From Klebsormidium nitens (Eukaryota > Plantae > Klebsormidiophyceae), in NCBI GenBank assembly GCA_000708835.1, contig DF236988.1, forward strand, positions 124,001 through 188,000: DNA of 64,000 bases. Reading direction: 5' to 3'. Position numbers and translations under genes: made by a program. The notes below the pieces were generated by a model. The model saw nothing but the letters and a program-made list of their open reading frames with translations. It did no database searches and was not told the origin of the DNA. Every line of letters starts with the position of its first letter. Position 1 is the stretch's first letter. Shown piece after piece: positions 4,848 to 21,866 of this stretch.

Positions 4848-7800
4848 TCAGTGAGAACCCGAGCTTCGTCTCCGTTCTGGCAACTGCGAGGGATCCATGT
4901 GCCCCAGAGCGTCCATAAAGTCCTTCACAACGTCCTTGCCCTTCATGAAGTTGATCCACCGAAGCCGCTCATTCTGCAGAAACAAAGAGCACGTCAGCCT
5001 TTTAAAAATTGTCGTCTGTGCCGCCAACTGAATACGTCCCTTTCTCAAACAATAAAGCAATGACAATACTTTCCTGGGTTGTCCGACCAGATGAAGGCAG
5101 AACTCTCGACATTTGCCAATCATCTAATTGCTAAACGCTGACTCCGAACGGATGTATCATGCAGCCTTCCCTACTGCACAAAAAGCGTCGCCTTCGAATG
5201 AGATTGACCTGAGAGTCTGCCTTAATCCTCAATAACAGACCTGCTTCGAAGAAAACAAGAAAACGTACTCCGCTTCTACAAACTCCACAGCCACACAAAT
5301 CATATGACAACAAGCTTCACCGCAGCACCAAAAACCAAGTTCATCTTTGCACCAAGCAAACAAACTCGTTTGAATTCTGCAGCTCTATTGCATCAGCCGG
5401 AGGTGCAGTTGGCATCGGACCTGTATAGTCCCTGGCTTACTCAAGTTGCTTTACACCTTCCTCTCTTTTCCCTGTACGTTGTTCTTCTCGCTCAGAATCC
5501 CTCCGTAGATCCAGGGTTTCTCAACAATCCAAAAATCTCCCTCTGGAAAACTCGTCCACAGGGGTGCACAACCAACGTGTCCAAAGGGCGACCGCCCCCC
5601 TCACCTGCAGTGCCGTGTGATCGCTCGCCTGGCTGATCGGCAGGTGCAGCGCGGGCGCCTCGAGCGCCTTCTCCAAAAACGGCACCACCGGCATCGTCCC
5701 CCCCTCGCGCACGTACATCGGGCGCACGCCCCACTGCCGCCCGATTGCCTGCTCCGCCGTGCGGTAAAACACGTTGGTCGGGTCTGCGAGCCACCAGTCG
5801 CCCACGTGCTGGACCTTGACCTCCAGGCGGTTGCCCCGGGCGCGCAGCTTGGCGAACTCGTGCGCGGCGTGCGCTCGGATCTTCTCGATCAGGCGCTCGG
5901 GGTCCTGGTTGGGCACGTGGCGGATGCAGATCTGCGGGAGGGAGAGAAAGAGTGAGAATTTGGCGGAGCCGAGAAAGCTGGTTAGAGAACGCTGAGACTA
6001 TGTCTGACTCAGAAGTTCTCGGCCGGACAGGTGGCGAATCAAAACCCGGAACTGGCGGTCTTCAAGGACTTCTGTACAACTTTCAAAGCGGTTCAGCAAG
6101 CATTCAGGAGGTAAAGGAAGACACGGGTCAAGAGGAATATCAGAAGAGAACATGATAACAGGATGGTCGTCATCCTTTGCCCTATGATCAGCGAGACAAG
6201 AGATTTGCCCCGATTTTGCCTAGTTTAAGCAGATAAGAAACACACGCTCCTTCAGCATGAAGGCTTGCTGCTCCTTACCCTGGCACTGCAGCCCTTAGGT
6301 ATTGTGGACCAGCCCACCGCCCCCGACTCAACGCCCAGAATGCTCAGAGACGGGTTCCGCCACCGGTTCATGAGCACCTCCCGCGAAGTGGAGCCCGTCA
6401 GATCCTTCAACCCGCTCGCAGCCTGCGCACACGTCGTCAAACGTCAGTCACTTCTGTTGAGCACTCCTCAACTCTGCACGTAACAGTAAGGACAGTGATG
6501 CCGTACAACGAGGAGCTTTCAATGACAGCAAGTTCGCTTCCTTCAAACCGTAGCTTCTTGGAACAGAAAAAAGTGGCAACCTGACGAGATCACTCTGCGC
6601 TTGTTCCCCGTGTCGAACGGAGAATGCACACGCCCAGGAATGAGAGAAATTCCATACTAACACAGAGTACGAACTTTGATGAAGACAGGAAGCCAATACT
6701 TCCAAAGCTCCCCAATGCAGCTCGTGCTCGGCCTTTTCCCCGTCTGATTTTTTAAGTATGTCTTCTTCTCGAAACACTTTCCGAAATCTTTGTTCCCTTT
6801 TACGTTTCCTTTCGCAACAGGCTCCCCACCTTGTACTCAGAGAGCTTGAACGTCAGCCCCTCATACAGCGCCTCCTCCTCACGGTCCAGCGGCTTGACGT
6901 CATCGTAGAACCCGGGCACCAGGATCATGTTGTTCGAGTCCACCAGGTTAGACAGAACCGCAACCAGGTTATTCATGGGTTCCGTAAACGAGCCCCCGTC
7001 CGAGCCCGAGTGCAGGTTCTTTTCGGGGCCGGTGACTTCGAGCACGAGGCAGATGAGGCCGCGCATGCCGTAGGTTAGGCAGGGGTGGTTGTCGCTGCAA
7101 GGGGGGGGTAAGGGGTGTATTAGCACATCGAGGCCGTGCTTAGACTAAGCGACCCTGAGGGAATGTTTTGGCAATCGGCTTTCGCTGAGAGGTGAGAACC
7201 ATTTTCGACGTTTCAGTTCGTCAGAACGAAAGTGTGGGCTAGGCAAAAGTACCGGTTGCTGCAAGTCAACGACTAAGTCAGCGGTCCGACGTCCCTGTTG
7301 TTGAGAAGCTGTCCGATGGGCTACTTCGACAGAGCTGCACTGTTCCAGTAGTCAGGACAGTCCACAGACAAATTCTTTCGCACAAACCGCCAGTGGCTAG
7401 GTCTTGAAGCTAAGCGAATTTCGTCAGTCAACGCCAGACAACCGAGTCACGAGTCTTGCCAGTTTGTTGTATGTAGTAACATTCGCCACAAACAGTAACC
7501 TCTCCGAGCAGAAAGAGGCATTTCATCTAAGAGAGCGATACGCAACTAAGATCGTTGTATGAGCAACACTGACGAGCAAGAAAAGCTGCTGAAAATAAGT
7601 TTACCTTAGCCATGCGGTGTTAGAGGTTAGGATGAGCTGCGTGCCTTCAAACCACTCTAGGTTCGACTGGACAGCTTCCCGGAAACCCTGCAGAACAGCC
7701 CCATACAATGCGTAAATTGGGAAAGTCTTCAAAAAGCAACGTTCTGTAGTATCTTCGAATAGAAAGACCCTATGATATCCTTCCTTCAGTACGCTCCAGA

Positions 7801-10800
7801 TCAATGCCGATCCTTGCCACCACACGTACAAACCATGACGCATGACGGCTTATCGGACTCCATGTCTTAAAAGCTCTTTGAACCAAGCCCGACGACTTCA
7901 GGATAATCATTTTTCCCAGCTCAAAAGCTGCTTCATTCCCTTATCCTCGCGCCTGAATGTAAGATCGCAAGCTCCGCACAATCCACCCTGATTTTGATGG
8001 CTTCGACGAGACCGCGAAAAGCCGCCAGAACAGCGGTCACACGCAGCACGTAAGACCCCAGGAGCCCCCGCTCCACGCACGCACCTGGCAGCCGTTCTCG
8101 TTCATGCCATCAAACACAAAGATGACGTTGACTTTGAGGTCGCCCTTGGAGGCCAGTTCTCGGACAGCGGACAACGTGGCGATGATTGGGCCCTTGCAAT
8201 CGGATACGCCGCGCCCATACAAGAACCCGTCGATCGCGGCCAACTCCCACGGGTCTGTGGTCCACCCGTCCTCGGGCGCCGCGTTGACGTCGTAGTGGCC
8301 GCTGATGGTCACCGTCACCGCATTAGGATCCTGCGAGAGTTCACAAACGACGGAACATTTGAACGTGCAAAGCTCATGGTCAGAGATATGACCCAAATGT
8401 TGTACACTTGACAGCTACAGCTATAAAAATTAGAATTGCATTTAGTTGTAGTGGCCGCTGACGGTCACCATCACGGCATCAGGATCCTGGAAAAGCAAAC
8501 ATTGACAGATTTCCGATCAAGGACCTGTCTGGCGTCGAGGTTTGGTAAAGAACGATGCGGGAAATCAAAGCGAGGCTATAAATGCGCGGCACAATCTGGT
8601 TTCGAAGCCCGGAGGTTACGTCACGTTATGGTGACCGTTATTATGGTCACTGCCGAGCTTTTGGAATGGGGCCAAATTCACAATTTAAGCGAAGTTCTGC
8701 ACTGCGAGGCGATAAATGTGTCAGAGCTTTTTGATTTGCAACAAACGGTTGCTTTTCAACGGAAGGGGGGCGCACCGCGCGTCCCCAAGCGCACTCTCAA
8801 CTCACGGCAGTCCACAATCTCCAAAATCTCCAAGACTGGTTGCACGCAACTAAACCCGAACCTTCCAATCATATCTTCAAAACCCACCTGTATAAGCCGG
8901 CCCATAACCACCGGGTTAGTGTTTTCCTGCCCCACCACCAGCTTCACCTCCGCTCCGATTGTCTCCAGAAGGCCCTTCAAAAAGTTGGCGCCTTTCCACG
9001 CCTGGTCCTGACCCGCACGGCTGCGGTCCACGCTGACCGTCCGGATCGAAACGAACGTCCGGAGCAGCTCCTCCATCTCGGACTGCTGCTTGCGGCTCTC
9101 CTCGCGGGGGAAGGTCTGCATCAGCAGAGGGGCGGATTAGAGGATTAAAGACGTAGTGACAATCAGTCGAAGTTGGGTGCCGCTTCCAACATCTTCCGCC
9201 GGTTTGATTGCTGGACGGAATGTCCAGGCGGTGTCAGGTCCTGAGCAGACTCTCCAAGACAACTCGTTCCAACAAGAAACTCAACAACCAAGAAGAGCTT
9301 ACCAACGACGCCTGTCCTCATCAGAACTTATTGGGCACCCCACAGAAGCAATCAGATACCAGATTTAGTTGCTCGCTCTCGTCTCAATGATGGCGATTCT
9401 TCTCGCGGCGGTAAAAGGTTCCCACCTTTTTGCGCGTCTGCGGCGAGAGCGCCCCCTTGCCGACGGGCGTGTCCGCGGTGTCCACTTCCCAAAAGCGGAC
9501 GAGGCCGTCGGACGAGCCGGTGAGGACGCCGTCGTGCGTGCAGGCGACCGAGAGGAAGATCGCGTCCTGGTTCAGGAAGATGCGCAGGCACTCATACGTC
9601 TCGAGGCTCCACATCCTGCGCGTGAGGACGAGAAGAGGTGTCAACGAGTCCCTTTGAAAATCAGCAAGCTAAGGTGTAATCGCAAGTGTAGGTAGATGAA
9701 AGAAGCCTGACATGATGAAAGATTTGCAGACAGCTCTATGCCTCCCTACATTCTCAAGGCTGATTGAAGAGAGCGGCCAAAAGGTAAATTCGCACTTGAG
9801 GTGCGGCGAGTGGGATTCGGAAGAAGGTGAGTGTGAAGACGAAAATGGCATCTTCTGTTAATTAAAATGCGCGACCTTTGTATCCGAGGTCCTTAATCCT
9901 GTGCAGGAGCGTTGCAGGAGTGAGAGTGCACAATCGCACTGTTTCTCTTGGCAGAAACGCACCATAATCCTGCAAAGGTGCACCTTACCTGACGGTGTGA
10001 TCGGACGACGCGCTGTAAAACTCCTCCCGGTAACCGATTGCCAGCCCTAAAACGTCGTCCGTATGTCCAGTAATTGTCGTAATGGGGCACTTGGTAGACA
10101 TGTCCCAAACCCGGATCGTGTTATCTCTTGACCCGCTCAGCAGCCGCCACTCGAGCTTCGACGCGTCATCGCATGAGACGCGGTCTTGTCGGTCCGGGCT
10201 GTCCCTCACGGCCGCGAGCGCCATGACGCCGCCCTTGTGCCCGTGCAGCGTCGTCTCGCAGTTGCCTGATTCTAGGCACCAGACCTGCAGAGATGACGGT
10301 AACGGTCAGGAGGAGATAAAAATGTCACAGTATCTGACGTTCAGTTAAAAAAGCGAGGATTTAGGCAAAAATTGCTTGACAACGACATCGACATTCCCCG
10401 TGGTCTGGGTTTCCACGGAAACTCCTTGTTCGGGAATCACATCGGGGGCTGTTCGTCTACTTCCACGTTTTTAGCAGTGCCTTTCCACCGCTTGCAAGAG
10501 CCCCCAACTGATCTGCGGGCAGAGACCCTCATCGTAGAGTTGAGAGAGCTTGCAAAACCCTGCCAAAAAGTTCTTCCGACTTCAATCTTGACTACAAGAA
10601 TCGTCTCTTCTTTCATGTGGATTACTTCATCTAGAAATCTCTGGCCGTATTTCGTCGACGAGGAAAAACAACGTGGTGCCAGTGGGTTAGAGTGCGCAAC
10701 CCCTTCACCCACCTTGACAAGCCCATCCCCTGCGCCGCTGCACAGGAACGGGTCGCACATGGTCAACGCGTACACGCGGCTGCAGTGGCCCCCCCTCTCC

Positions 10801-13800
10801 GTATCGGTCAGCACCAGCGTCGGCTCCGTCGCTTTACTGGCTGCCGGCACGCCCCAGTACGCCGATCCCGCGGGAGAGCCAAGCATGCTCGCGGTGGATT
10901 GCTGCGTTTCCAGCTCCCCCCCGTGGGCCTCGTCTTTCAACAAGCTAGAATGAAGACCGCCCCCAGCTTCAGGGAGGGTTCGTTTCCGGGGGATGGAAAT
11001 GGGGACCGAAGATGAGAGGGGCTGCGTCGAATCGACCCTCGTCAGAGTGGGGGGGTGCAGGGGGGGGTGCCGTACATGGGGGGTGGGGATGCCGGGCAAC
11101 GCGACTTCGGGGGGGACCATCGCCGGGAACGCGTGCCCCCCGGGGGGCACGTTCGGGTGCGCGCTTGACCCCCCGTTGTTTGCCATCTCCGCGTCCCAGA
11201 CTACAGAGCAGTACATCCCGTCCGACGCGGCGCCGTCGCCATCGACGCTGCTCGCGCGGCTCAGGGGGTCCTCCGGGTCGCTCGAGTACCCGTTCCCCTC
11301 GATGTGCAGCCTCCCGGGCTCCTTCGACCGCCCGTTCCCGGCCCGGAAGTGCCCGTTCCCGAGCGCCGGGAGCGTCGGGCTGCTCGACGACTTCTGGAGC
11401 AGCGTCTCCCGGCCCCCCGCGGCGAGGACCGCCGCGCAGGTCCCGTTCGACATGCGACTGCAGCGGATGATGCTCGTGCCGGCCGGGCCCGCGACCGCGC
11501 GCCCCTGCGCGAGCGCGAGCGCGAAGACGTCCCCGTCCGAGTGGCGCAGCGTGCTGATGAGCTGGTACGAGTGCAGGTCCCAGCACTTGACGACGCGCGT
11601 GGAGCTGCTGTAGAGGCGGCCGTTGTGCGTGGAGATTGCGAAGATGGTCTGCGAGTGGCCCGCCAGCGTCTTGATGTGGTTGAAGTTGCGCAGGTCGTAC
11701 AGCTTAATAAGGCCGTCCTGGCCGCCTGGCAAGGACGGGGCTCGGGCGTCAGCGATGCTCGAAGCTCCAGATTATGAGGTCTTTACTTGCTTCTCGCAAA
11801 CATGCTGCCTCAAGTCAGTCGTCTGAGTCGGTCATTGGATCTAGGAGATTCAAGGGCAAACCGCTCGACTCTTTTTCTCAGCTGCATGCCCAAGGACTGG
11901 AGCATCTCACATGCTTCCTATGAACCATAGCTGATGGCATGCACAACAGCAATGTTGTCTTCAGTCCTTCCAAACCAAGCCGATTTGTCCAAACACAATG
12001 CAAAGCTCCCTCCTCTTCGTGCAGGACAAAAATTCGAAGGAAGTTGTGCAACATGATCGCAGATAGTGCTCCTTTACCTGTGAAGATGCGATCCCCGTCG
12101 ATGGCAATCGCCATGACCGCCTTGCTGTGCGCTGCCAAGCTGTGGCGGGGCTGCACGCTGACGGGGATCTCGGCTGGCAAGAGGGGCTCAGGTGCTACTT
12201 CTCTCCTAAAGCGGGGGTTGTACAAGTGCTGCTGAGGGGCGGGGGTGGGGGCCAGTGCCTTAAAGCAGCGGCTAATGTCTTTAGCGATGGGGGCGGGGGG
12301 GTTGATGGGGCACAGGAGAACGTCGACAAACGCGCTCTTGAAGCGCGTCAGGACGACCATGTTGTTTCGGGGAACCTGCAGAAAGGAGACGAGATCAGGC
12401 ATTGAAAGTCTGTCTGAGACACAGACGAAGTTTCCGGGGCAGCCTTCAAGCACTGCCGTGGCTGACGACCGGTGGCTGACATGATGAATTTTAACTCGTT
12501 TGCAAACAAAGCCATCAGCAATGACGAAGCAACTTGCAATTGCGAAGTTTCCAAAACGACAAATCTGCCGTTAGCTCATGGTGCCGCTCAGGCGAACACC
12601 TGACCTCAAACGCTCTAACATAGCCAGACAAGGAGCACAGGCCTGGTTGACTTCAGCAACCATACCACCTGCCCGAGCTCGACGATAGGAATATGAAAAT
12701 GACTCCCATTGCCAAGATCTGAACCTGCCTTGGCTATCAGCCCTTTGGTTGATCTGCCAGGGTGTTGTCTGTTCGATTCATTCCCATCCTCCAAGGAAAT
12801 CGGGAACTGAGATTAGCAACAAACCAGTATTCTTCTTTCTTGGATTCTGCAAGGCCCCCAGACGTAGTTGCACTGCGCTTACCTGGATCCAATCCGAGTT
12901 CTCCTCCGTCAGCGGTTCCGACGCCACAATCCCCAGCAGGCCCCTCCGATCGCTGTGCTTCACAAAGTACTGATTACTGTTTGAGTCAGCCCCCACCCAC
13001 TGGCTCCCCGAGGCGTAATACAAAGAGGCGGGAGCCTCAGACTCGAGGTTTGTATACCGAGATGCAACCACAGTTTTCCCGTCTGAGACCACGAAATTGA
13101 GCAGGTTGAGCTCATCCCCGTGGCCTTCTTCCCGCCCAATGCGAATGATGGTGTTGATCGTGCTCTCCATGAGGGCCACGAGCTCCTCCGGCCGCTTCTC
13201 CGCCATGAGGTCGTCGATCTGGGCAACACAATAGCCATCGTTTTGGAGGTGACCATATTTCTCATTGAGAGAAGCGGAACGACAAGTAACTTTTGGAAGG
13301 GCATAGAGAAAGCAACAGCTTATATACGCATAGGCTGTGGACCTTTGTACAAGTTCAGGATTTGGCGGACGCCAGGCTATGTGATTGTCGTGCCGCCAAG
13401 TCTCATATTCAGTGCAGGACTTGGTGGTGATGTCTGAGGCCAGTCTACTCACTCTCTTCTGAGTATGGCACTTCTATCAGCGAATAGCCTTCAGGAGAAT
13501 GAGGTCCCCCTTATGCAGTAGCGATTGGAATTCTTTCTTGCGTAGGTCTTCCTCTTGAAGGTGTCGACCAAAGGGTGTCAACCAACGCATGAAGCAATAG
13601 ACTGGTGCAAGGTGAAGAGATGGTAACTCATTCTTCATCTTCAGGCTCCAAAAACAAGAAGGCCATAAAAGTGATCCCAGCAAGCAAACCCCGCGGCCCT
13701 ACTATCCAACGCATCCTCTGCCCAGGAAATGAGAACCTTTTAAGAAGCAGAACTAAGAGCAGCCTGCTTGGCAAGACTGCAGGACACCTACCTGGTTGAG

Positions 13801-14925
13801 GAAGAGTGCAAAGGAGACGGCGGAATCAGACTCAAAGCTGGGGCACTGCTGATAGATGTCATCGCGCAGAGTGTTGAGGAGGGCCCTCCGCACCAGGTGG
13901 AAAGCGCCAATCCCACCATTGTGCATCCACAGGTACCGCCCGCACACGAATGGCTGCAAGCAGTCACATATGCTGGAGTTCTAACCAGCTGCTGGAGTTC
14001 TGACCAGACACAGCTCTTATCTCTGTCTTGCAATTGAACTCACCAGCTCGCACAAGTCAGTATCTGCTCAGCATTTTGATAGGACCAACATCTTGAGCTG
14101 CTCGCTTATCACATCGTGCTTAGAAGATGCGTGCACTCAAGCAATGGCCGAGCCAGCACATGCTGCTGCGCTCTGCTCCTTTGCGGCAATCTATATGTGT
14201 TTCATCATGACCTTGCAAGATGACTGCTGACTTCTCACCTGGCAATTGGAGTCACTGACAGGGATGCCAGGATACGCTGCCCTCACGTGTGCGAAAATAA
14301 GAGGCGACACTACTTTTGAGGCCAGCCTTTCCAGGTTCCTATTGTTCCAAGCAGGCTGGGTGCTCGAGAAGACGCACGGGGTGGGGTCATCCATCCCAGC
14401 CGTTTCTGAAGAGTACCAGCCAATTCCAAATCCATCACCTGGAGTTAGAGGTGCAAAATGTTTAGATAGAACGTGAATAGGCTTGCAGCCGCTATTTGAT
14501 CGATTACTTTGGTGTAAAGAAGGGTAGCTCGCACATAAAGTAGTCAAATCAAGACGACAGCGCAAGAATAAAAGAATGACCTATTTCAAAAGAAAGCGGT
14601 AACTTGGTCTTCCAAGCGCTAGACCACTTGAGCACAAAGCAAGATATTGCGGCAAAAGAATCAGCGAAAGATAGAAACTCCCTTGCCCAGCTGTACGGGA
14701 AGACAACTTTTTAGCTGCCAACCAGAGAGCACAGCCGCTGCAGCCGCGTACAAGCGGGTTTGTGTGAAAGGAGGGAGGCACAAAGACAAACCCACCGTTT
14801 AGGTAACCGTGTCCAGTCAACCGCTCCTTTGCATCATACGACTGCCGCGTCAGAGACCTTGAGGGCTTGGTTACCAAATCTGCTATCTTCTGATCTGTCC
14901 CCAGATAGACCATCAAACGGCACAT
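4848..14925 (-). CDS. DUG3-DUG2: Fusion protein, 1347 aa: class-II glutamine amidotransferase (Dug3-like) + WD40 repeats + M20A peptidase-like domain (Dug2-like)
   Basis: 15 exons: 14925-14796, 14438-14239, 13953-13792, 13218-12883, 12375-12078, 11725-10713, 10284-9989, 9615-9426, 9115-8888, 8330-8085, 7687-7605, 7094-6830, 6422-6279, 5931-5605, 4973-4848. Total 4044 nt with all phases matching. GATase motifs: MCRL (Cys2 nucleophile), NGDGFGIGWY, PAWNNRNL, FAHVRAA, NCQPF, WMHNGG, ASEPL. WD40 motifs: GH...WD. M20 motifs: GHYDV, GRGVSDCKGP, YGMRG, LHSG, REGGTMP. Confidence 0.88.
8289..8489 (-). repeat. Intronic duplicate of the acceptor and first 42 nt of exon 10 of the DUG fusion gene
   Basis: ttttccag|GATCCTGATGCCGTGATGGTGACCGTCAGCGGCCACTACAAC then TAA (8486-8442), versus the real exon start GATCCTAATGCGGTGACGGTGACCATCAGCGGCCACTACGAC (8330-8289); 37 of 42 positions identical. 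Confidence 0.85.
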
Positions 14926-16266
14926 GGTTGCTGCTTTGCCCCTGGGCCCACTGAGCTCGACCCACCAATGGATGCTGTTGCCTGATCCACCTCCTCACTT
15001 CTGCCCCAATACACACGATATCTCGTCAAGCTTTAGTTTTCTTGTCCAGAGCTCTGTCCCTGGGGCTCACACCCAGGACATCTAATGGTGTGATTGTGCA
15101 ATAGAAACCCTCAGCAGGTTTGAGTGCCACGCGTGCTTTATTTGGAAGAGATCACGCCAACGAAGGCGAAAGATCTTCGGGCAAAATCACTATGTCATCC
15201 ACGGATCTGGCGAATTGCACTAGCCTACTGTCCAAGGTGCATCATGCGACTTTCTAGAAACCAAAAAATGGTCAATGCTCTCTTGTTCGCATCCAGATCC
15301 ATCAATGCTCAGCTCTTTTCAAGACAGCAAGAGATTGAGAAAAGAGTCCTGAAGGGGCCGCCATCACCATGATTCAACCTTCAATGGATTGTATCAGAAC
15401 TGAGCGGTCTAAAACCAGGGAGGATGGACCAGTAACCAGGTAGCCAGGGCCCAGACTACCTACCTAGCTCAGACTCAAATATGAACTTGTGAAGTTGAAG
15501 TCAGAGCAGCCATTTGCAGCTGCTATCTCAGCCTATACAGCTGGCTACGTTCAGCCGGCGGAGTACGGTAGTAAGTACGGTACGGTACCGCACATCATGG
15601 ACTTGGACGACCGTGCGGCGTGATCTGCCCTGCGCCCGGGCGTTGTGTCCGCCGCAGGGCGCCGTGTAGTGACCGGTCATAGGTAGGTTCAATAAAATGG
15701 CCTTGCTTCCAGTGACGTCGGTCGGTGGCCGGCCTTGTCAGACCCGAAGGCTGACTTGCAGCTACCGGTAGGGGCCATTTTCTGGCCCCTACCGTTTGTT
15801 AAAGTTTGACCGCCAGCGGGTGACGGGGCTACGCCCGGGCACCGCGGTCGCTACCGTTACCTAGAACTGGCTCGTCTGAGCATTCACTGTACCTGGTACC
15901 AGGTACCGGGTACCGTGACTGTGTCCCGGCACAGAATAACGGCCGCGGCTATACGACCAGTTCTCAGCCTCCCACTTTTCGGCCACGTCACCATCGCGCG
16001 CAGGGGAGTTCCCGGTCCATGTTCTAGCATGGCCATATGTGGCAGTGCTTATGTATACATCGCCATTCTAGTTCCAGCTTCCTTCACAACATGGGCCAGC
16101 GCTGTCAACGTGTAGAGTCAATTAGAGCTGCGTCCTCGCGAGAATGCGAGCTTTGCCGCTTTAGGTTCGGGCTACGGTATGTCGCCAACAGTTTAGACCT
16201 TTGAGGTACTGAGGAGTTTCAGCACCCTTCAATCGTTGTATCAATTGTTGACCATCATCTGTTGGG

Positions 16267-19200
16267 ATGGCCAAACCCGGCACGGCCAGCTCAGACGAGC
16301 GGGGCATGACCAAGAAGCAGCTGAAGCGGCTCGAAAGAAAGCGGAAAAAGTCTCTGGCAGAGGCGGGCCTTCTGCCAGGATCTTTCTCTGGCAATCTTGC
16401 TGCAGCATTGGACACCAAGGATGCATATGACGGGGATCATGTTGATGACGAGGACCGTGGTGTCAATGCTGGAGAAGAACGAGCCAAGCCTGCGGATCTT
16501 GACGCCGGAGAAGTGGCGCCTGGTGGTGGTATAAGCAGTGAGGAAGACGTGGATAAGGCGTCCGCAAGTTTCGATATAAGGAACTCGCTGGTGGGAAAGG
16601 TGGCGGAGGCCCTGTTGGCGAAGCAGTTGGAGGAGGAGAGGGCGGCTTTGCCTGCCAGTAAGAGGACCAGGCTTGGAAGCAAGGCTTTTGTGGAGGTGGT
16701 GCCCAGTGTGGGTGAGTCAGGAAATGTTAAGAAGGAGAAGAACAAGGAAGGGAAAGCGGGGAAGAAAGGAAAGAAAGAGAAGAAGGAGAAGAAGAAAGAG
16801 AAGAAGCGGAAGAAGAAGGAACGAGGAAGTCAGGAAGCGCCAGCCAATGCAGACTTGGACCACGCTGAGGTGCCGGAGTCAGCCACGAGGAAACGTCAGC
16901 GGGGGGTGGAAGCATCACAGCAGAAATTCAAGACTCCTGTTGACAATGCAGAGGGTCGGCAGACGCGGGCATCAAAGAAGCGGAAGGGCGAAGAGAAGGA
17001 AGAGAAGCAGAAGACAAAGCTGCCGAAGAAAGAGCAACCATCCCCCTGGCCTGATATCAAGTATGAGGCGTCGAGCGCGCGAGCGGTGCTTCGGCAGGGG
17101 CAAAGTGTGATGATTGATGGAGCGGCAAACGTTACTCTGATCGCAGGGGGGGCGTCTGTGATGGGGTACCGATTGAGAAGAGAAGAGGAGGTGCTAGTGA
17201 CGTCGTGCGGGCAATTGGCACCGGTTTCGATCATCGTCCATAACGGCGCAAGGGGGAGGAACGATCTTGGAGTAAAGGAACATGAGAACCGTGGTCTGAC
17301 AGGGGGGGAAGATGGGGAGACGAGCAGGGGAGAGGAAGCGGTGATGATGTTCAGCTCCTGCTGGTTGAGAACGAGCGAAGGGGCGGGCAGCTCAGGGGGG
17401 CGAAGGACGTTCAGACTGGTGAGCTAAGCTGTACTTCAAAAGAAAACATAAAAACTATATTCAAAGGTCAAACGCAGTACTCAAAATCTACCGAATAAAT
17501 GTAATATCAGGCAGCATACACAAGAACTTTGAGGAGGACAAGCATCCGAATCTGAGGTCAATGCAAGCAAGTCAGTGTGGAGCAATTACTGCTCCAAGAC
17601 TAGATCTAAATCGAAGTAAGATTTGATCCGTTTGTGTCTAGATGTGTGTGTTGAACAGAGACTCAGGAGTTGGCTCGCGAGTAGATCGGTCATTTGCCTC
17701 CCTTTCTTTCCGCCTCTTTGATAGTGTACAACAGCAAGCCCCGTTTGTAGCCAAACAAGCTGCTGAGAAGGGGGTTCTTTGCACGATGGAAAAGTCTCAT
17801 GCACCAATTTGCGATGCGTCTTCGCTTTCTGGCCCCATCATTTTCCATGAAGTCTGGAACAGTACCCCGAGTCTACTGCTTTTTTCCCCCTCTGATTTTT
17901 CTTGACAAGTCTTGCATTCTGCAGGAGCCAAAGGCGCCAGGTGCCTCTCGGTCATTTCCGCAAGCACCCGTATCCGAATCCAGAAACAAAGGGAACGAGA
18001 TCCAGCTTCAGCCGACCATCATCCCCCTCGCTTGGAAAACAGTGACTGACTCCGTTCTGAACGGAGCCAGCACAGCAACTAGAGCGGCAACAGATATTGC
18101 AGCAAAAGACCGATCAGACGGTTTGGGGGGCACAGGGCTGAGTGCATCGGACGGGGCAGCGGAAGCGGGAGTGAGCGGGAGGCCCCCAATTGTGGTGATC
18201 TGTGGAGGAAAGAACGTCGGCAAGTCGACGTACGGGCGGTACCTGGTCAACCGCCTCCTTGACCGGTGCGTGTGATGTTCTGTTTATCGATTTTCCGTGT
18301 GCCTCTACAATGAATCTCCCGCAGTCCTGTATGCTCGTTCTTACTCCTTTACACATCTGAAGGAAGCCAACGTCCGTGGTTCCAGGCTGTCCAGGGAGTG
18401 GACCAAGTTTTCCTATCCCTTCCAAATACGATTATCACCGGTTTGAAGTGTGGAAAACTGTCAAACGTTCTGACAAATGGGAGCCGCAACCTTTCTCGCC
18501 CCAGGCTTTCTTAATGTATGTGAGCCTATGCTTTCGTAGGAATAACGTCAGGTAGCATAACGCTAAGTAACACAGGGTCATGGACCGTGGAGCGGGTGGG
18601 GTTAAGAAGGAAATTCAGGGCGGTTAGGGAGCGGAGCACATCAATTTGTCGTTTGTCCTACCCACGGGGACTGTAGCTATCCTACCTAGGAGGTGTGCTA
18701 CCTAAAGTAAAGGTTATGAATGTCAAAACGTGGCAGTCTACGACCTGAATTAGATTTATCTCCGATCTAGTCATTGTCAATTCAGTGACCAGTAAGCTTT
18801 TCGGACCCTTACCAGAAACTCTGCGTTCGCACCCGCACCCGCACCCACCTCAACGCCCTAACTAACCCCATCCGTCCCTATGGATGTTCACTAGATTGAT
18901 CGGAGTCGAAATCTCTGGATTGTGAACGTAGGTCGATTGCTCCTTGCAGGTACTCAGCAGTGTCCTACTTGGAGACTGACGTCGGCCAGCCAGAGTTCAC
19001 CGCCCCGGGCCTCCTCTCCCTGCACCTGCTGACGTCACCCGTCTTCGGACCGCCCAGCACCCATATGCGAGACCCCAAAACGTTAGTGGCTTTCAACTGT
19101 GTGCCTGCTCGGACACTCCGTTGACCTGCAAAGTCAGGCGATTGCAGCCAATTTCTTTGCCTGGCGATGGATTGTGTATCCTCGAGTCTGACGTGCTCTG

Positions 19201-21866
19201 GAAATTGTAGCCGCTCCTGAGAGCAGCTGATTTTGTTGGCTTCAAGAATCGTGACTCGTTTGCCCAATGTTTCAAGGGTGCCAGTTCCTGATAGCGAATG
19301 CCGCTCGGGACGCCGTCAATAATCTCATCTCGACCGCACCTTACCGAGACGCTACTGGGTGGTATTTTCGCCGCAAAACTCCGCGCTTTCCAACATTCAG
19401 ATGTAGCGTACTTGACATAAAAGTCGCCGACCACGGTCGGGTCCCTTCACTGGCCAGATTTGTCCATAGTTGGTTCCGCTGGTCAGATGCCTTCAGGAGT
19501 TCGGCGTCTATTGAACTTGCTTGAGTCCCTGGCGACCCATCACTGGTCCAAGTACATGCAATACGCTCTTGGCCCGTTGAACTCAGTTGTGCACAATCGT
19601 CTCCTTCCTGATCCAAGTGATCATTTGGACCCCTCTCTTTGGTTCAAACGATATAGCATTTTCTCGAAACGAACTTGAGGCGGGTCCTTGTAGCAGCCTC
19701 TCGGCCTGGACACAACTGTAGGACGCATTTCAGCCCCCCCTCCGTTTCCATTTACTTTTCGTTGACGCGCCGAAGCCGTACCTCCGTCGAGCAGGTCTTT
19801 CTTTTATGGCGACGTCTCTGCCAAAACCGACCCGGAGCTGTACCTGCGGTGCGTGGTGGCGCTGTACGACGAGTTCCGGCGGAACCACTACGACGGGGCG
19901 GCCGAGGGGAAGCAGGTAAGGCGGACAGGATGGGTTCCATTTGGACGCTAGGTCTTGTTCCCTTGTAGGATTTGTAGAAAGGACCTGTGTCGAAAACGAA
20001 CATCTAACCCTTGAATAACGTGCACGGCTGCTTTAGGATCAACCAGATCAGTCCGTTAGCAATAAGTGAGCTCAAAGGCAGACGTCATCTTTCGTTAACC
20101 CCGCAGCTTCCGCTGGTGGTTAACACGCACGGCTGGGTTAAGGGCCTGGGCCTGGACGTTCTGATCGACATCCTGCGCTACACCGTCCCGACCCACGTGG
20201 TCGACGTGCAGTCCGCCAAGGCCAACAAGAACCTGCCACCTGGCAACTTCTGGGAGACTACAATAGAGCCCCTCTCGCGCGTGCATTACATCCCGACCGC
20301 TGTTCCCGACCAAGTGGATGCCAGGTACGCCAACAGGTTGGAATGGCTTTCCCCCTTGGCTGCGAGCCCAGTTTTTGCGCGTTCAATTTACCTCGCAGGA
20401 CAATAAGCCTTTGTTTTGTGACATGTTCTCGTTGGGCGCCACGTGTTCGGCCGAGTTCGCGCCACGTGCAACGAACAATTTCTCGCGTCCTAGGCCATAG
20501 CTTGATGAGAGCGGAAAGTCTGCCACACCTACTCTGGAGACAAACGCCCATTAGACTGCTTAAACAAAGGCTGCGACAGAATCGGTGGAGTGTCCCGGTA
20601 CGACAAGCAGTGTCCGCGTGTCTCTATCTGTTCATCAGAGGAAGGGCCGTTACGATGAAAGCTGACTGAGCGCGCTTTGATCAGCGCCACTCATACGAAG
20701 GATTCTGTGCCCTGAGCCTCAACCGCCGAGCCCCTTTCTTCGATTGCATTCGTTTCTGTTTTCGCATCCAACCTTCCTGGGTTCCTGAGTGTACTTGACT
20801 TGCCACTCCAGAAGGGTTATTCAAGAAAGCACTCCCGAAAACTCGATTTACAGTCTCGCCCCGCAAGCTCGGCGGTAATGCAGCATTCGTTCAAAAGGTT
20901 GCGTTGTGTGATCTGTATCTCCATGGCGACCAGATAGCCTGTATGTCACTTCTGTGAGTCGCTAAACACGGTGCTATGCAATCGAATTCTTGGCAACACG
21001 AGGGCAGAATATGCTGCGAAGGGGCCGCTACGGAACCACGTGCCCGGTTAACACCCTTCGAACCCCGCCCGTGCAGCACCCCCTTCGCGCACAAGTTCGC
21101 CCCTGAGGAGCGCGCTCTCCGCCTGCTCGCGCACTTCCAAACGGCGACCGCATCTGGCGCGCCCCCCGGCCTCGCCTTCAACGAGAACGACGCCTACTCC
21201 GCGCTCGCCACGTGTCTCGTCCACCACCGTCCGTTCCAGGTCCGGCTGGACGCCGTCCAAATCTACCACCTGCACGGGTACGTTCCGCCGGAAGAGGCCC
21301 TGTGGGCGCTCAACGGGGCTGTCGTGGGGCTAGCGAAAGCGGGCGCGGAGCCCGAAACGGGGCCCATGCCGCGGTGCCTTGGAATTGGTGAGGCTGCCAG
21401 TGTCGCTGTATTTTCCTTTTCATTTGTGATCAGGCCAGTGTCGAGTAGCGCTCCTCGATTTGCTCCAGCTTTTCCTGCTTTTAGTGATTTGGTGCAGTGA
21501 TGGCTTGTGGTAAAATCTGCTCGTAGACATCGCTCGACACCAGGACGGCATCGGTATCGAAGTCTGGTTGACTGCAAAGGCGGAGCGGACACGTCGACAG
21601 CCTCATCATTGGCGTTCCGTCCTACAGGGCTGGTCCGCGGAATCGACCCCGCCCGGGGCGTCCTCTTCCTGGTCACGTCCCTGCCGCTCGCGGAGCTGCA
21701 GGGTGTGAATACGCTCATCCAGGGAAAAGTTGATTTGCCTCTCCAGCTTCTAAGCGCGCCTCCTTTTGTGTCCCCTTACCTGGCGTTTAATTCGATCGCG
21801 GCGGAGGGCACCGGCTCGGCCATGGTGAAGAGCCGGAACAATATCATTCGGAAGGTCGGGGATTAG
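16267..21866 (+). CDS. NOL9: Polynucleotide 5'-hydroxyl kinase NOL9/GRC3 (Clp1-type P-loop), about 837 aa, with Lys/Glu-rich N-terminus
   Basis: Phase-consistent exons 16267-17418, 17925-18265, 18950-19081, 19795-19915, 20107-20324, 21077-21387, 21628-21866. Motifs: ICGGKNVGKST (P-loop), YLETDVGQPEFTAPG, LPLVVNTHGWVKGLG, ALNGAVVGL, CLGIGLVRGID, C-terminal MVKSRNNIIRK. Confidence 0.9.

What the first reader, a model, noticed from the sequence alone, without database searches (positions are those of the whole stretch)
4848..14925. Single-polypeptide Dug3-Dug2 fusion: a supposedly fungal glutathione-degrading complex in a green alga
Seen: exon 12375-12078 runs without a stop from the GATase C-terminus (VPRNNMVVL...VLLCPI) through a Pro-rich linker into the first WD40 blade (SLAAHSKAVMAIAIDGDRIFTG). 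It splices in phase to GQDGLIKLYD, and the ORF continues to an M20A domain. Known: in yeast the (Dug2-Dug3)2 complex, made of Dug3 (Ntn GATase-II, Cys2) and Dug2 (WD40 + M20A), starts GGT-independent glutathione breakdown and is described as fungal. Plants are known to use GGT, GGCT and GGP enzymes. Inference: this is a fused glutathione gamma-glutamyl hydrolase in the green lineage, from ancient retention or horizontal transfer. I cannot confirm that such fusions are unreported.
Basis: partly seen in the sequence, partly recalled or inferred. Interest (0 to 1): 0.75.

Follow-up and report, generated by a model that had tools for sequence, protein, structure and literature searches.

The report
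One-chain Dug3-Dug2 enzyme in alga
This green alga makes, as a single 1347-residue protein, the two subunits that yeast uses as a complex to start breaking down glutathione. The same fusion sits unnoticed in the gene sets of many other non-fungal eukaryotes, so a pathway that papers call fungus-specific is not.

Summary
They join the amidotransferase exons to the WD40 exons in one open frame.

I completed a 15-exon, 1347-residue gene model on the minus strand (14925-4848). It has a Met-Cys class-II amidotransferase, a Pro-rich linker, a 7-blade WD40 propeller with a roughly 210-residue disordered insert, and an M20A domain.

Both halves are of the Dug type:
- The amidotransferase sits in a eukaryote-only clade with fungal DUG3, apart from 26 bacterial homologues.
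- The M20 domain groups with fungal Dug2, apart from Dug1/CNDP dipeptidases, and shares Dug2's Asp-to-Asn change at a metal ligand.
- In this protein the M20 general base and a further His ligand are also lost, so the M20 domain is probably a dimerising scaffold.

The fusion is not unique. It occurs in streptophyte and chlorophyte algae, a red alga, ichthyosporeans, a choanoflagellate, an amoebozoan and a euglenozoan, mostly annotated as hypothetical or mislabelled DUG1.

The trees follow organismal groups, which favours ancient retention over transfer from fungi. No paper I could search reports the fusion. Glutathione hydrolysis is inferred, not shown.

An earlier finding of this scan (s1-337126) describes a shorter paralogue without the M20 domain elsewhere in this genome.

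The parts
4848..14925 (-). Whole coding region of the fused gene: 15 exons, 4044 nt CDS, 1347 aa, all introns GT..AG (285-631 nt)
14796..14925 (-). Exon 1. ATG at 14925-14923; Cys2 codon at 14922-14920 (the N-terminal nucleophile). The first in-frame stop upstream is at 14997, with no start codon in between.
14239..14438 (-). Exon 2, amidotransferase (DGFGIGWY ... FAHVRAA; Arg96)
13792..13953 (-). Exon 3, amidotransferase (MHNGG with Asn122/Gly123; SDS with Asp153)
12883..13218 (-). Exon 4, C-terminal half of the amidotransferase (LLNFVVSDGKT ... SEPLT ... DWIQ). This exon was the query of the whole-library search.
12078..12375 (-). Exon 5, the fusion exon. It holds the end of the amidotransferase (12375-12304, aa 277-300), the Pro-rich linker (about 12303-12148, aa 301-352) and the first WD40 blade (from about 12147).
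10713..11725 (-). Exon 6: WD40 blades 1-4, with a G/S/P/A-rich insert of about 210 residues (about 11444-10812, aa ~470-680) between blades 3 and 4. The insert is present in the mRNA. Spirogloea has an insert at the same place, with little sequence conservation.
9989..10284 (-). Exon 7: WD40 blades 4-6
9426..9615 (-). Exon 8: last WD40 blade and the start of the inter-domain stretch
8888..9115 (-). Exon 9: start of the M20A domain. Its upper end is fixed by the 30-nt loose end of the RNA contigs.
8085..8330 (-). Exon 10: M20A metal site. His963, Asp965, Asp995 and Glu1029 are kept. The general-base position is Asn1028 (8102-8100).
7605..7687 (-). Exon 11: M20A. Asn1056 (7621-7619) sits where CNDP2/Dug1 have a metal-binding Asp.
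6830..7094 (-). Exon 12: M20 dimerisation (lid) domain (LHSG motif)
6279..6422 (-). Exon 13: lid domain, continued
5605..5931 (-). Exon 14: return to the catalytic domain (REGG). Ala1304 (5613-5611) sits where CNDP2/Dug1 have the last metal-binding His.
4848..4973 (-). Exon 15: C-terminus (NERLRW...) and the stop codon at 4850-4848

Best explanation
It encodes, in one chain, the orthologues of yeast Dug3 (a class-II N-terminal-nucleophile amidotransferase) and Dug2 (a WD40 propeller plus an M20A domain).

Proposed mechanism; the steps are inferred unless marked as shown:
1. The initiator Met is removed, and Cys2 becomes the free N-terminal nucleophile. Cys2 and the conserved Arg96, Asn122/Gly123 and Asp153 are shown.
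2. The amidotransferase docks on its own WD40 propeller through the roughly 50-residue Pro-rich linker. This replaces the inter-subunit Dug3-WD40 contact that activates Dug3 in yeast.
3. Two chains pair through the M20 lid domain, giving the equivalent of (Dug2-Dug3)2.
4. The enzyme hydrolyses the gamma-glutamyl bond of glutathione, and probably of other gamma-glutamyl peptides, to glutamate plus Cys-Gly in the cytosol.
5. The M20 domain has lost its general base (Asn1028), one metal-binding Asp (Asn1056, as in all Dug2 proteins) and one metal-binding His (Ala1304); these losses are shown. It is therefore a scaffold, so Cys-Gly must be cleaved by a separate peptidase.

The fused gene was inherited vertically within the green lineage.
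For: - One transcript, one frame.
- Domains.
- Whole-library search with exon 4: 22 of the best 150 hits are 875 aa or longer. All 22 have WD40 and 20 have Peptidase_M20.
- Amidotransferase tree: fused proteins, fungal DUG3 and other eukaryotic standalone forms lie on one side of a branch from the 26 bacterial homologues (SH-aLRT 98). Fungi form a clade (99) and green algae form a clade (96).
- The fungal hits belong to a family whose members are named DUG3.
- M20 tree: fused proteins plus fungal and oomycete Dug2 form one clade (100), apart from CNDP/Dug1-type and bacterial M20.
- Shared Asp-to-Asn change and the further losses.
- EgtC model TIGR03442 scores 174 bits, below its cut-off of 218.65, about the same as fungal DUG3 at 164 bits.
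- Yeast biochemistry, as cited in held papers: Dug3p is inactive unless bound to Dug2p (bioRxiv 10.1101/2023.02.02.526638). The complex also cleaves gamma-Glu-Met (PMC7617739).
Against: - No enzymology exists for any fused member, so the substrate is inferred from orthology at 41-49% identity to fungal DUG3.
- Intramolecular docking and dimerisation are transferred from yeast, not modelled here.
- Both trees were quick searches with SH-aLRT support only, and they are unrooted.
- No confirmed EgtC or YafJ sequence was in the amidotransferase tree.
- Exons 9-15 are supported by homology, splice phase and contig length, not by laid reads.
- The runs are only guessed to be RNA from their record, although intron-free contigs say so.
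Confidence: 0.78

Rival explanations
1. The protein is bifunctional. The amidotransferase releases Cys-Gly, and the fused M20A domain cleaves it, so that one chain carries out the whole DUG pathway.
For: The M20A domain is closest to the CNDP2, CNDP1 and Dug1 dipeptidases among solved structures. His963, Asp965, Asp995, Glu1029 and the REGG motif are kept. Chlorophyte members keep the Glu-Glu pair and the last His.
Against: In this protein the general base is Asn, a metal-binding Asp is Asn and a metal-binding His is Ala. The Asp-to-Asn change is shared with fungal Dug2. From my memory of Kaur et al. 2012, which is not held here, yeast Dug2 has no peptidase activity. The M20 tree puts the domain with Dug2, not with Dug1.
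Confidence: 0.08
2. The architecture is the same, but the physiological substrate is a different gamma-glutamyl compound, with glutathione turnover a minor role. Candidates are gamma-Glu dipeptides, glutathione conjugates, phytochelatin-related peptides or an ergothioneine-type intermediate.
For: The family is related to EgtC, which removes a gamma-glutamyl group from a different thiol compound. The yeast complex also acts on gamma-Glu-Met (PMC7617739). The genome is reported to hold a second, shorter paralogue (earlier finding s1-337126), which leaves room for divergence of function.
Against: The domain lies in the eukaryotic clade with fungal DUG3. It scores below the EgtC cut-off. The only characterised members of that clade degrade glutathione.
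Confidence: 0.12
3. The gene reached green algae by recent horizontal transfer from a fungus, or the fusion is an assembly or annotation artefact that joins two genes.
For: Papers describe the pathway as fungus-specific (PMC9012958). Contig-level data can in principle merge overlapping transcripts.
Against: - The gene has 14 spliceosomal introns.
- Identical spliced contigs come from 4 studies, and the junction lies inside an exon with an unbroken frame.
- The same fusion occurs in at least 18 named non-fungal taxa.
- In both trees the fungi are a separate clade, and the green clade splits into streptophytes and chlorophytes.
Confidence: 0.02

Closest known systems
Saccharomyces cerevisiae (Dug2p-Dug3p)2 glutathione-degrading amidotransferase complex (DUG pathway)
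   Same: - The three domains are the same: class-II amidotransferase with Cys2, WD40 propeller and M20A.
- Each half is in the same clade as its fungal counterpart.
- The Asp-to-Asn change at an M20 metal ligand is shared.
- The expected chemistry is the same: glutathione to glutamate plus Cys-Gly.
   Different: - One polypeptide instead of two genes; the order is Dug3 first, then Dug2, joined by a Pro-rich linker.
- A disordered insert of about 210 residues in the propeller.
- The M20 site is further degraded (Asn1028, Ala1304).
- The host is a streptophyte alga, not a fungus.
- Activity is untested.
Fused GATase-WD40-M20 proteins already in public gene sets: Spirogloea, Chlorokybus, Mesostigma, Coccomyxa, Chlorella, Volvox, Picochlorum, Porphyridium, Creolimax, Amoebidium, Salpingoeca kvevrii, Soliformovum and Entosiphon
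   Same: The architecture and domain order are the same. The Spirogloea protein is 60% identical over residues 1-1330, and the Chlorokybus protein 51-58%.
   Different: None of them is characterised. Most are named hypothetical, or mislabelled 'Cys-Gly metallodipeptidase DUG1' or 'Cndp1'; the Porphyridium protein is named 'putative di- and tripeptidase DUG2'. Chlorophyte members keep more of the M20 site.
EgtC (ergothioneine biosynthesis amidohydrolase) and bacterial standalone GATase_4 proteins, e.g. PDB 3mdn
   Same: The fold family is the same, with the Met-Cys N-terminal nucleophile and gamma-glutamyl-cleaving chemistry. Bacterial homologues are 36-45% identical over the whole domain.
   Different: - They are standalone proteins of about 285 aa, with no WD40 or M20 partner nearby.
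- They fall outside the eukaryotic clade.
- The EgtC model scores below its cut-off.
- Solved EgtC structures match only residues 1-125, at about 60 bits.
Dug1 / CNDP2 / CNDP1 M20A dipeptidases
   Same: The M20A fold with its lid domain is the same. They are the best solved-structure matches, at 245-288 bits for the Spirogloea proxy.
   Different: They are standalone and catalytically complete. They form a separate clade. This protein lacks the general base, one Asp ligand and one His ligand.
Arabidopsis GGP1/GGP3 gamma-glutamyl peptidases
   Same: They do the same job, cytosolic glutathione hydrolysis to Glu plus Cys-Gly, and they rescue yeast dug2 and dug3 mutants (PMC9804317).
   Different: From my own knowledge, they are class-I amidotransferases with an unrelated fold and a single domain. 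They are an analogue, not a relative.

Membership tests
Dug3 (class-II N-terminal-nucleophile amidotransferase of the DUG pathway) | Protein starts Met-Cys, so that Cys becomes the N-terminal nucleophile | tested here: met
   MCRLMVYLG at 14925. There is no in-frame start between the stop at 14997 and this ATG.
Dug3 (class-II N-terminal-nucleophile amidotransferase of the DUG pathway) | Residues invariant across fungal DUG3 and fused proteins are present (Arg96, Asn122-Gly123, Asp153, SEP264-266, D-W) | tested here: met
   Invariant columns of alignment A2 are all present in the window protein.
Dug3 (class-II N-terminal-nucleophile amidotransferase of the DUG pathway) | Groups with fungal DUG3 rather than with bacterial, EgtC or YafJ-type relatives | tested here: met
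   In the 71-row tree the eukaryotes, including fungal DUG3, are separated from 26 bacterial homologues (SH-aLRT 98). The fungal family carries DUG3 names. Caveat: no confirmed EgtC or YafJ was in the tree. The EgtC comparison rests; YafJ was not compared.
Dug3 (class-II N-terminal-nucleophile amidotransferase of the DUG pathway) | Hydrolyses glutathione to glutamate plus Cys-Gly, dependent on Cys2 and on Dug2 | not testable with these tools
   Needs an enzyme assay or yeast complementation.
Dug2 (WD40 + M20A subunit) | WD40 propeller followed by a C-terminal M20A domain | tested here: met
   Pfam WD40 and Peptidase_M20 match the exons. Seven blades can be read in the model. The order is the same in all 22 long relatives.
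Dug2 (WD40 + M20A subunit) | M20 domain is of the Dug2 lineage, not the Dug1/CNDP lineage | tested here: met
   Fused and unfused Dug2 M20 domains form one clade (100), apart from CNDP/Dug1-type and bacterial M20. All share Asn at the position of a metal-binding Asp.
Dug2 (WD40 + M20A subunit) | M20 domain without peptidase activity, serving dimerisation | tested here: inconclusive
   The sequence points that way: Asn1028, Asn1056 and Ala1304 replace the base and two ligands. Activity and oligomeric state were not measured.
Yeast-type DUG complex | Dug2 and Dug3 are separate polypeptides that assemble non-covalently | tested here: not met
   Here there is one mRNA and one open frame. This is the point of difference, so the gene is filed as a fused variant.
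EgtC (TIGR03442 equivalog) | Score at or above the curated cut-off of 218.65 bits | tested here: not met
   The close proxies P0164 and P0002 score 174.4 bits, and fungal DUG3 P0308 scores 164.1 bits. The window protein itself could not be submitted, because it is spliced.
Dug1/CNDP2 Cys-Gly dipeptidase | Complete set of M20A metal ligands and the general base | tested here: not met
   Three of the seven positions compared are substituted. The domain also falls in a separate clade.

The most novel reading that the evidence does not exclude
The fused Dug3-Dug2 gene is the ancestral eukaryotic form. It survives in green and red algae, holozoan protists, an amoebozoan and a euglenozoan. The two-gene arrangement of fungi, on which all knowledge of the pathway rests, arose by gene fission. 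The DUG route of glutathione breakdown would then be an old, widespread eukaryotic pathway. It persisted up to the closest algal relatives of land plants and was then lost in land plants, where GGP- and GGCT-type enzymes do the job.
Probability: 0.45. Interest if true: 0.6.

Novelty: new variant of a known kind. Interest (0 to 1): 0.45.

Why it matters
Papers on glutathione turnover treat the Dug2/Dug3 route as specific to fungi (PMC9012958). Plant work has looked for other cytosolic enzymes (PMC9804317). This gene and its many fused relatives show that the route exists well beyond fungi, including in streptophyte algae close to land plants.

The fusion is a natural 'Rosetta stone' that independently supports the Dug3-WD40 interaction. 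It offers a single-chain protein that may be easier to express and solve than the yeast two-subunit complex. It also corrects database names, since several fused proteins are labelled DUG1 or Cndp1.

Ordinary experiments can test all of this. It does not reveal a new kind of enzyme.

Tried and rejected
- A solved-structure search with exon 4 alone gave no meaningful hit; the whole domain of a close proxy was needed.
- Pfam on single exons gave only sub-threshold amidotransferase matches.
- My first automatic search for splice combinations in exons 9-15 found none, because the last acceptor (4973) lay just outside my search range. I fixed this by hand.
- I hoped the Streptomyces locus L080 would serve as a true EgtC outgroup. 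Its neighbours are succinate dehydrogenase-like and UvrA-like genes, not egt genes, so I do not call it EgtC.
- I checked whether bacterial homologues sit next to M20 or propeller genes. None has an M20 gene nearby. An S9/DPP-IV peptidase follows only in Pyrinomonadaceae, which is lineage synteny.
- The key paper, Kaur et al. 2012 (PMC3308760), is not held. Statements about it come from papers that cite it, or from my memory and are marked as such.
- Searches for 'glutathione degradosome', for 'DUG pathway' with algae, for Dug3 with Chlamydomonas, and for Dug2/Dug3 with fusion terms found no report of the fusion.
- I ran no structure prediction. The protein exceeds the size limit, and the tool returns no inter-domain contacts.
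Full report
**The observation**

On the minus strand, exon 12375-12078 is bounded by a CAG acceptor and a CAG|GTAAAG donor. It reads without a stop from the end of a class-II amidotransferase, through a Pro-rich stretch, into a WD40 blade.

Twenty listed public runs from 7 studies hold part of the stretch, and 18 of them hold 42-52% of its sampled words. That matches the exon share of the stretch, about 47%.

I laid the contigs of four runs from four studies and two organism labels. They skip seven intervals, each ending CT..AC on the plus strand, which is GT..AG on the minus strand. Two of these are exactly 12882-12376 and 12077-11726. Single contigs of 4360, 4406 and 4959 nt run from 14950 to 9426 and continue. 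Intron-free contigs can only come from RNA.

Joining the eight exons so defined gives 875 codons from ATG 14925 with no stop. The test 'transcripts ending between 12883 and 11725' is not met.

**Gene model**

The contigs' loose end past 9426 matches 9115 downwards. The remaining exons were placed by tblastn with fused relatives and by splice phase.

The result is 15 exons, all with GT..AG introns, a 4044-nt CDS and 1347 residues, with the stop at 4850-4848. The model aligns in one segment with the Spirogloea protein P0164 (60% identity, residues 1-1330), with no gap at any inferred junction. The longest contig leaves room for 1419 nt of remaining CDS plus about 405 nt of 3' UTR.

The first in-frame stop upstream of the ATG is at 14997, with no start codon in between. 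The protein therefore begins Met-Cys, as this enzyme class requires.

**Domains**

- Residues 1-300: amidotransferase (Pfam GATase_4 and GATase_6 on exons).
- Residues 301-352: linker.
- Residues ~353-868: seven WD40 blades. A G/S/P/A-rich insert of about 210 residues lies between blades 3 and 4. It accounts for the 65% G+C in 11001-12000. Spirogloea has an insert at the same place, but its sequence is poorly conserved.
- Residues ~885-1347: M20A domain with its lid. Its closest solved structures are CNDP1, CNDP2 and yeast Dug1.

**Is it Dug3 plus Dug2?**

A search of every protein in the 1.84-billion library with exon 4 gave 384 hits. Of the best 150, 22 are 875 residues or longer, with the match near their N-terminus. 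All 22 have WD40 and 20 have Peptidase_M20.

Mid-length hits include fungal proteins. One of them, P0139, retrieves a large fungal family with members named DUG3.

In a 71-row tree of the amidotransferase domain:
- All eukaryotic sequences (fused, fungal DUG3, a few standalone) lie on one side of a branch from the 26 bacterial homologues (SH-aLRT 98).
- Fungi form a clade (99).
- Green algae form a clade (96), split into streptophytes (99, including the window protein beside Spirogloea) and chlorophytes (99).

The EgtC model scores 174 bits on the close proxies, below its cut-off of 218.65, and much the same (164) on fungal DUG3. Solved EgtC structures match only the first 125 residues, at about 60 bits. 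By comparison, the window domain scores 236 bits against fungal P0139 in a local search.

For the other half, the best relatives of the WD40-M20 region after the fused proteins are unfused proteins of about 830-950 residues from oomycetes and fungi. Some of these are named 'glutathione degradosome'.

In a 48-row M20 tree, fused and unfused Dug2-type domains form one clade (100), apart from CNDP/Dug1-type and bacterial dipeptidases. The same fungal, streptophyte and chlorophyte groups appear.

The metal-binding Asp in the SDNYW motif of CNDP2 and Dug1 is Asn in every Dug2-type sequence examined, fungal or fused. This is a shared derived character.

**State of the M20 site**

His963, Asp965, Asp995 and Glu1029 are kept. 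The general base is Asn1028, the Asp ligand is Asn1056, and the last His ligand is Ala1304.
- The loss of the base is shared by Spirogloea, Chlorokybus and Mesostigma and by a partial Closterium protein.
- The loss of the His is shared by Spirogloea and Closterium.
- Chlorophyte members keep both.

From my memory of Kaur et al. 2012, which is not held here, yeast Dug2 has no peptidase activity, binds Dug3 through its WD40 domain and dimerises through M20. A held preprint states that Dug3p is inactive unless bound to Dug2p (10.1101/2023.02.02.526638).

**How it most likely works**

- Shown: one chain, an intact amidotransferase active site, a Dug2-type propeller and a degraded M20 site.
- Inferred: after Met removal, Cys2 attacks the gamma-glutamyl amide. 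The propeller, now tethered by the linker, activates the amidotransferase. The lid domain pairs two chains. The products are glutamate and Cys-Gly, and Cys-Gly is left to another peptidase.
- Location: the need for a free N-terminal Cys argues against a cleavable targeting peptide, hence a cytosolic location.
- Substrate range: the yeast complex also uses gamma-Glu-Met (PMC7617739), so a wider gamma-glutamyl peptide range is likely.

**Distribution and origin**

Fused proteins occur in these named taxa:
- Streptophyte algae: Spirogloea, Chlorokybus, Mesostigma.
- Chlorophyte algae: Coccomyxa (two species), Trebouxia, Elliptochloris, Chlorella vulgaris, Prototheca, Picochlorum, Bryopsis, Volvox (two species), Scenedesmus.
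- Red alga: Porphyridium, annotated 'putative di- and tripeptidase DUG2'.
- Holozoan protists: Creolimax, Amoebidium, Salpingoeca kvevrii.
- Amoebozoan: Soliformovum.
- Euglenozoan: Entosiphon.

A Euglena paper lists a single contig as the orthologue of the 'GSH degradosome proteins' (PMC6351624). No land plant appears among the best 120 relatives of the WD40-M20 region. This suggests loss in land plants but does not prove it.

Transfer from fungi is not supported, because both trees mirror organismal groups and the fungi are monophyletic outside them. Holozoan protists carry the fusion while fungi do not, so fission in fungi is a reasonable reading. The trees are unrooted, however, and the deep branches are unresolved.

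**Novelty**

Papers call the pathway specific to fungi (PMC9012958). Four searches of the held library found no paper that links Dug2/Dug3 to algae or to a fusion.

Against that, the fused proteins are plainly visible in public gene sets. An earlier finding of this scan (s1-337126) had already noted this while describing a 711-residue paralogue without the M20 domain elsewhere in this genome, which it names Klebsormidium nitens.

That name fits what I see: the nearest relatives are streptophyte algae, and the runs carry two organism labels. I did not test the name directly.

My verdict is a real, expressed, single-chain variant of a known enzyme system. It is of moderate interest, mainly because it overturns the 'fungus-specific' label and offers a testable Rosetta-stone case.

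**Limits**

- There is no biochemistry.
- The trees are quick searches without bootstraps.
- The amidotransferase tree has no confirmed EgtC or YafJ.
- Exons 9-15 were not checked by laid reads.
- Family scans and structure searches of the amidotransferase and the whole M20 domain used close proxies (P0164, P0002), because a spliced protein has no reference.

Noticed in passing
window 16267-21866, + strand: The divergently oriented upstream neighbour is a multi-exon NOL9/Grc3/Clp1-type polynucleotide kinase gene. Pfam finds Cupin_NOL9, CLP1_P and NOL9_C on successive ORF pieces. Its first exon is very Lys/Glu-rich, which explains the strong purine skew at 16001-17000.
   Followed up: partly
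window 13432-13821 and 10263-10527: Low-depth contigs (depth 2-4, against 50-280 for the spliced form) run unspliced across intron-exon borders. They are most simply pre-mRNA or rare intron retention.
   Followed up: no
window 14926-15435, minus strand: One contig extends 485 nt upstream of 14950. If that stretch is unspliced, the 5' leader holds eight upstream ATGs (15081 to 15370), which are possible upstream ORFs.
   Followed up: no
P0155, P0173, P0183, P0042 (relatives in public gene sets): Fused three-domain proteins of Picochlorum and Chlorella vulgaris, and of an unnamed JGI/IMG record (P0042), are named 'Cys-Gly metallodipeptidase DUG1'. The Scenedesmus one is named 'Cndp1'. These names describe the wrong DUG protein and miss the amidotransferase.
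   Followed up: partly
P0423 versus P0170 (Coccomyxa subellipsoidea): An older annotation gives a 447-residue 'Zn-dependent exopeptidase' that looks like the M20 part alone. A newer annotation gives a 1284-residue fused protein. Split gene models probably hide further fusions.
   Followed up: no
L003, L005-L010, L013, L070 (Pyrinomonadaceae contigs): In these Acidobacteria the standalone Dug3-like amidotransferase gene is followed by a gene for an S9/DPP-IV-type peptidase, directly in L003 and within 0.2-1.5 kb in the other eight loci. The S9 family carries its own beta-propeller. The pairing is seen in 9 of the 80 bacterial loci, all from this one family. None of the 80 loci has an M20 gene nearby.
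   Followed up: partly
P0179 (Rhodelphis), P0180 (Aphanomyces), P0193 (Thraustotheca): Dug2-like WD40-M20 proteins without an amidotransferase part also occur outside fungi, in Rhodelphis and in oomycetes. I did not determine whether these are true fissions or truncated models.
   Followed up: no
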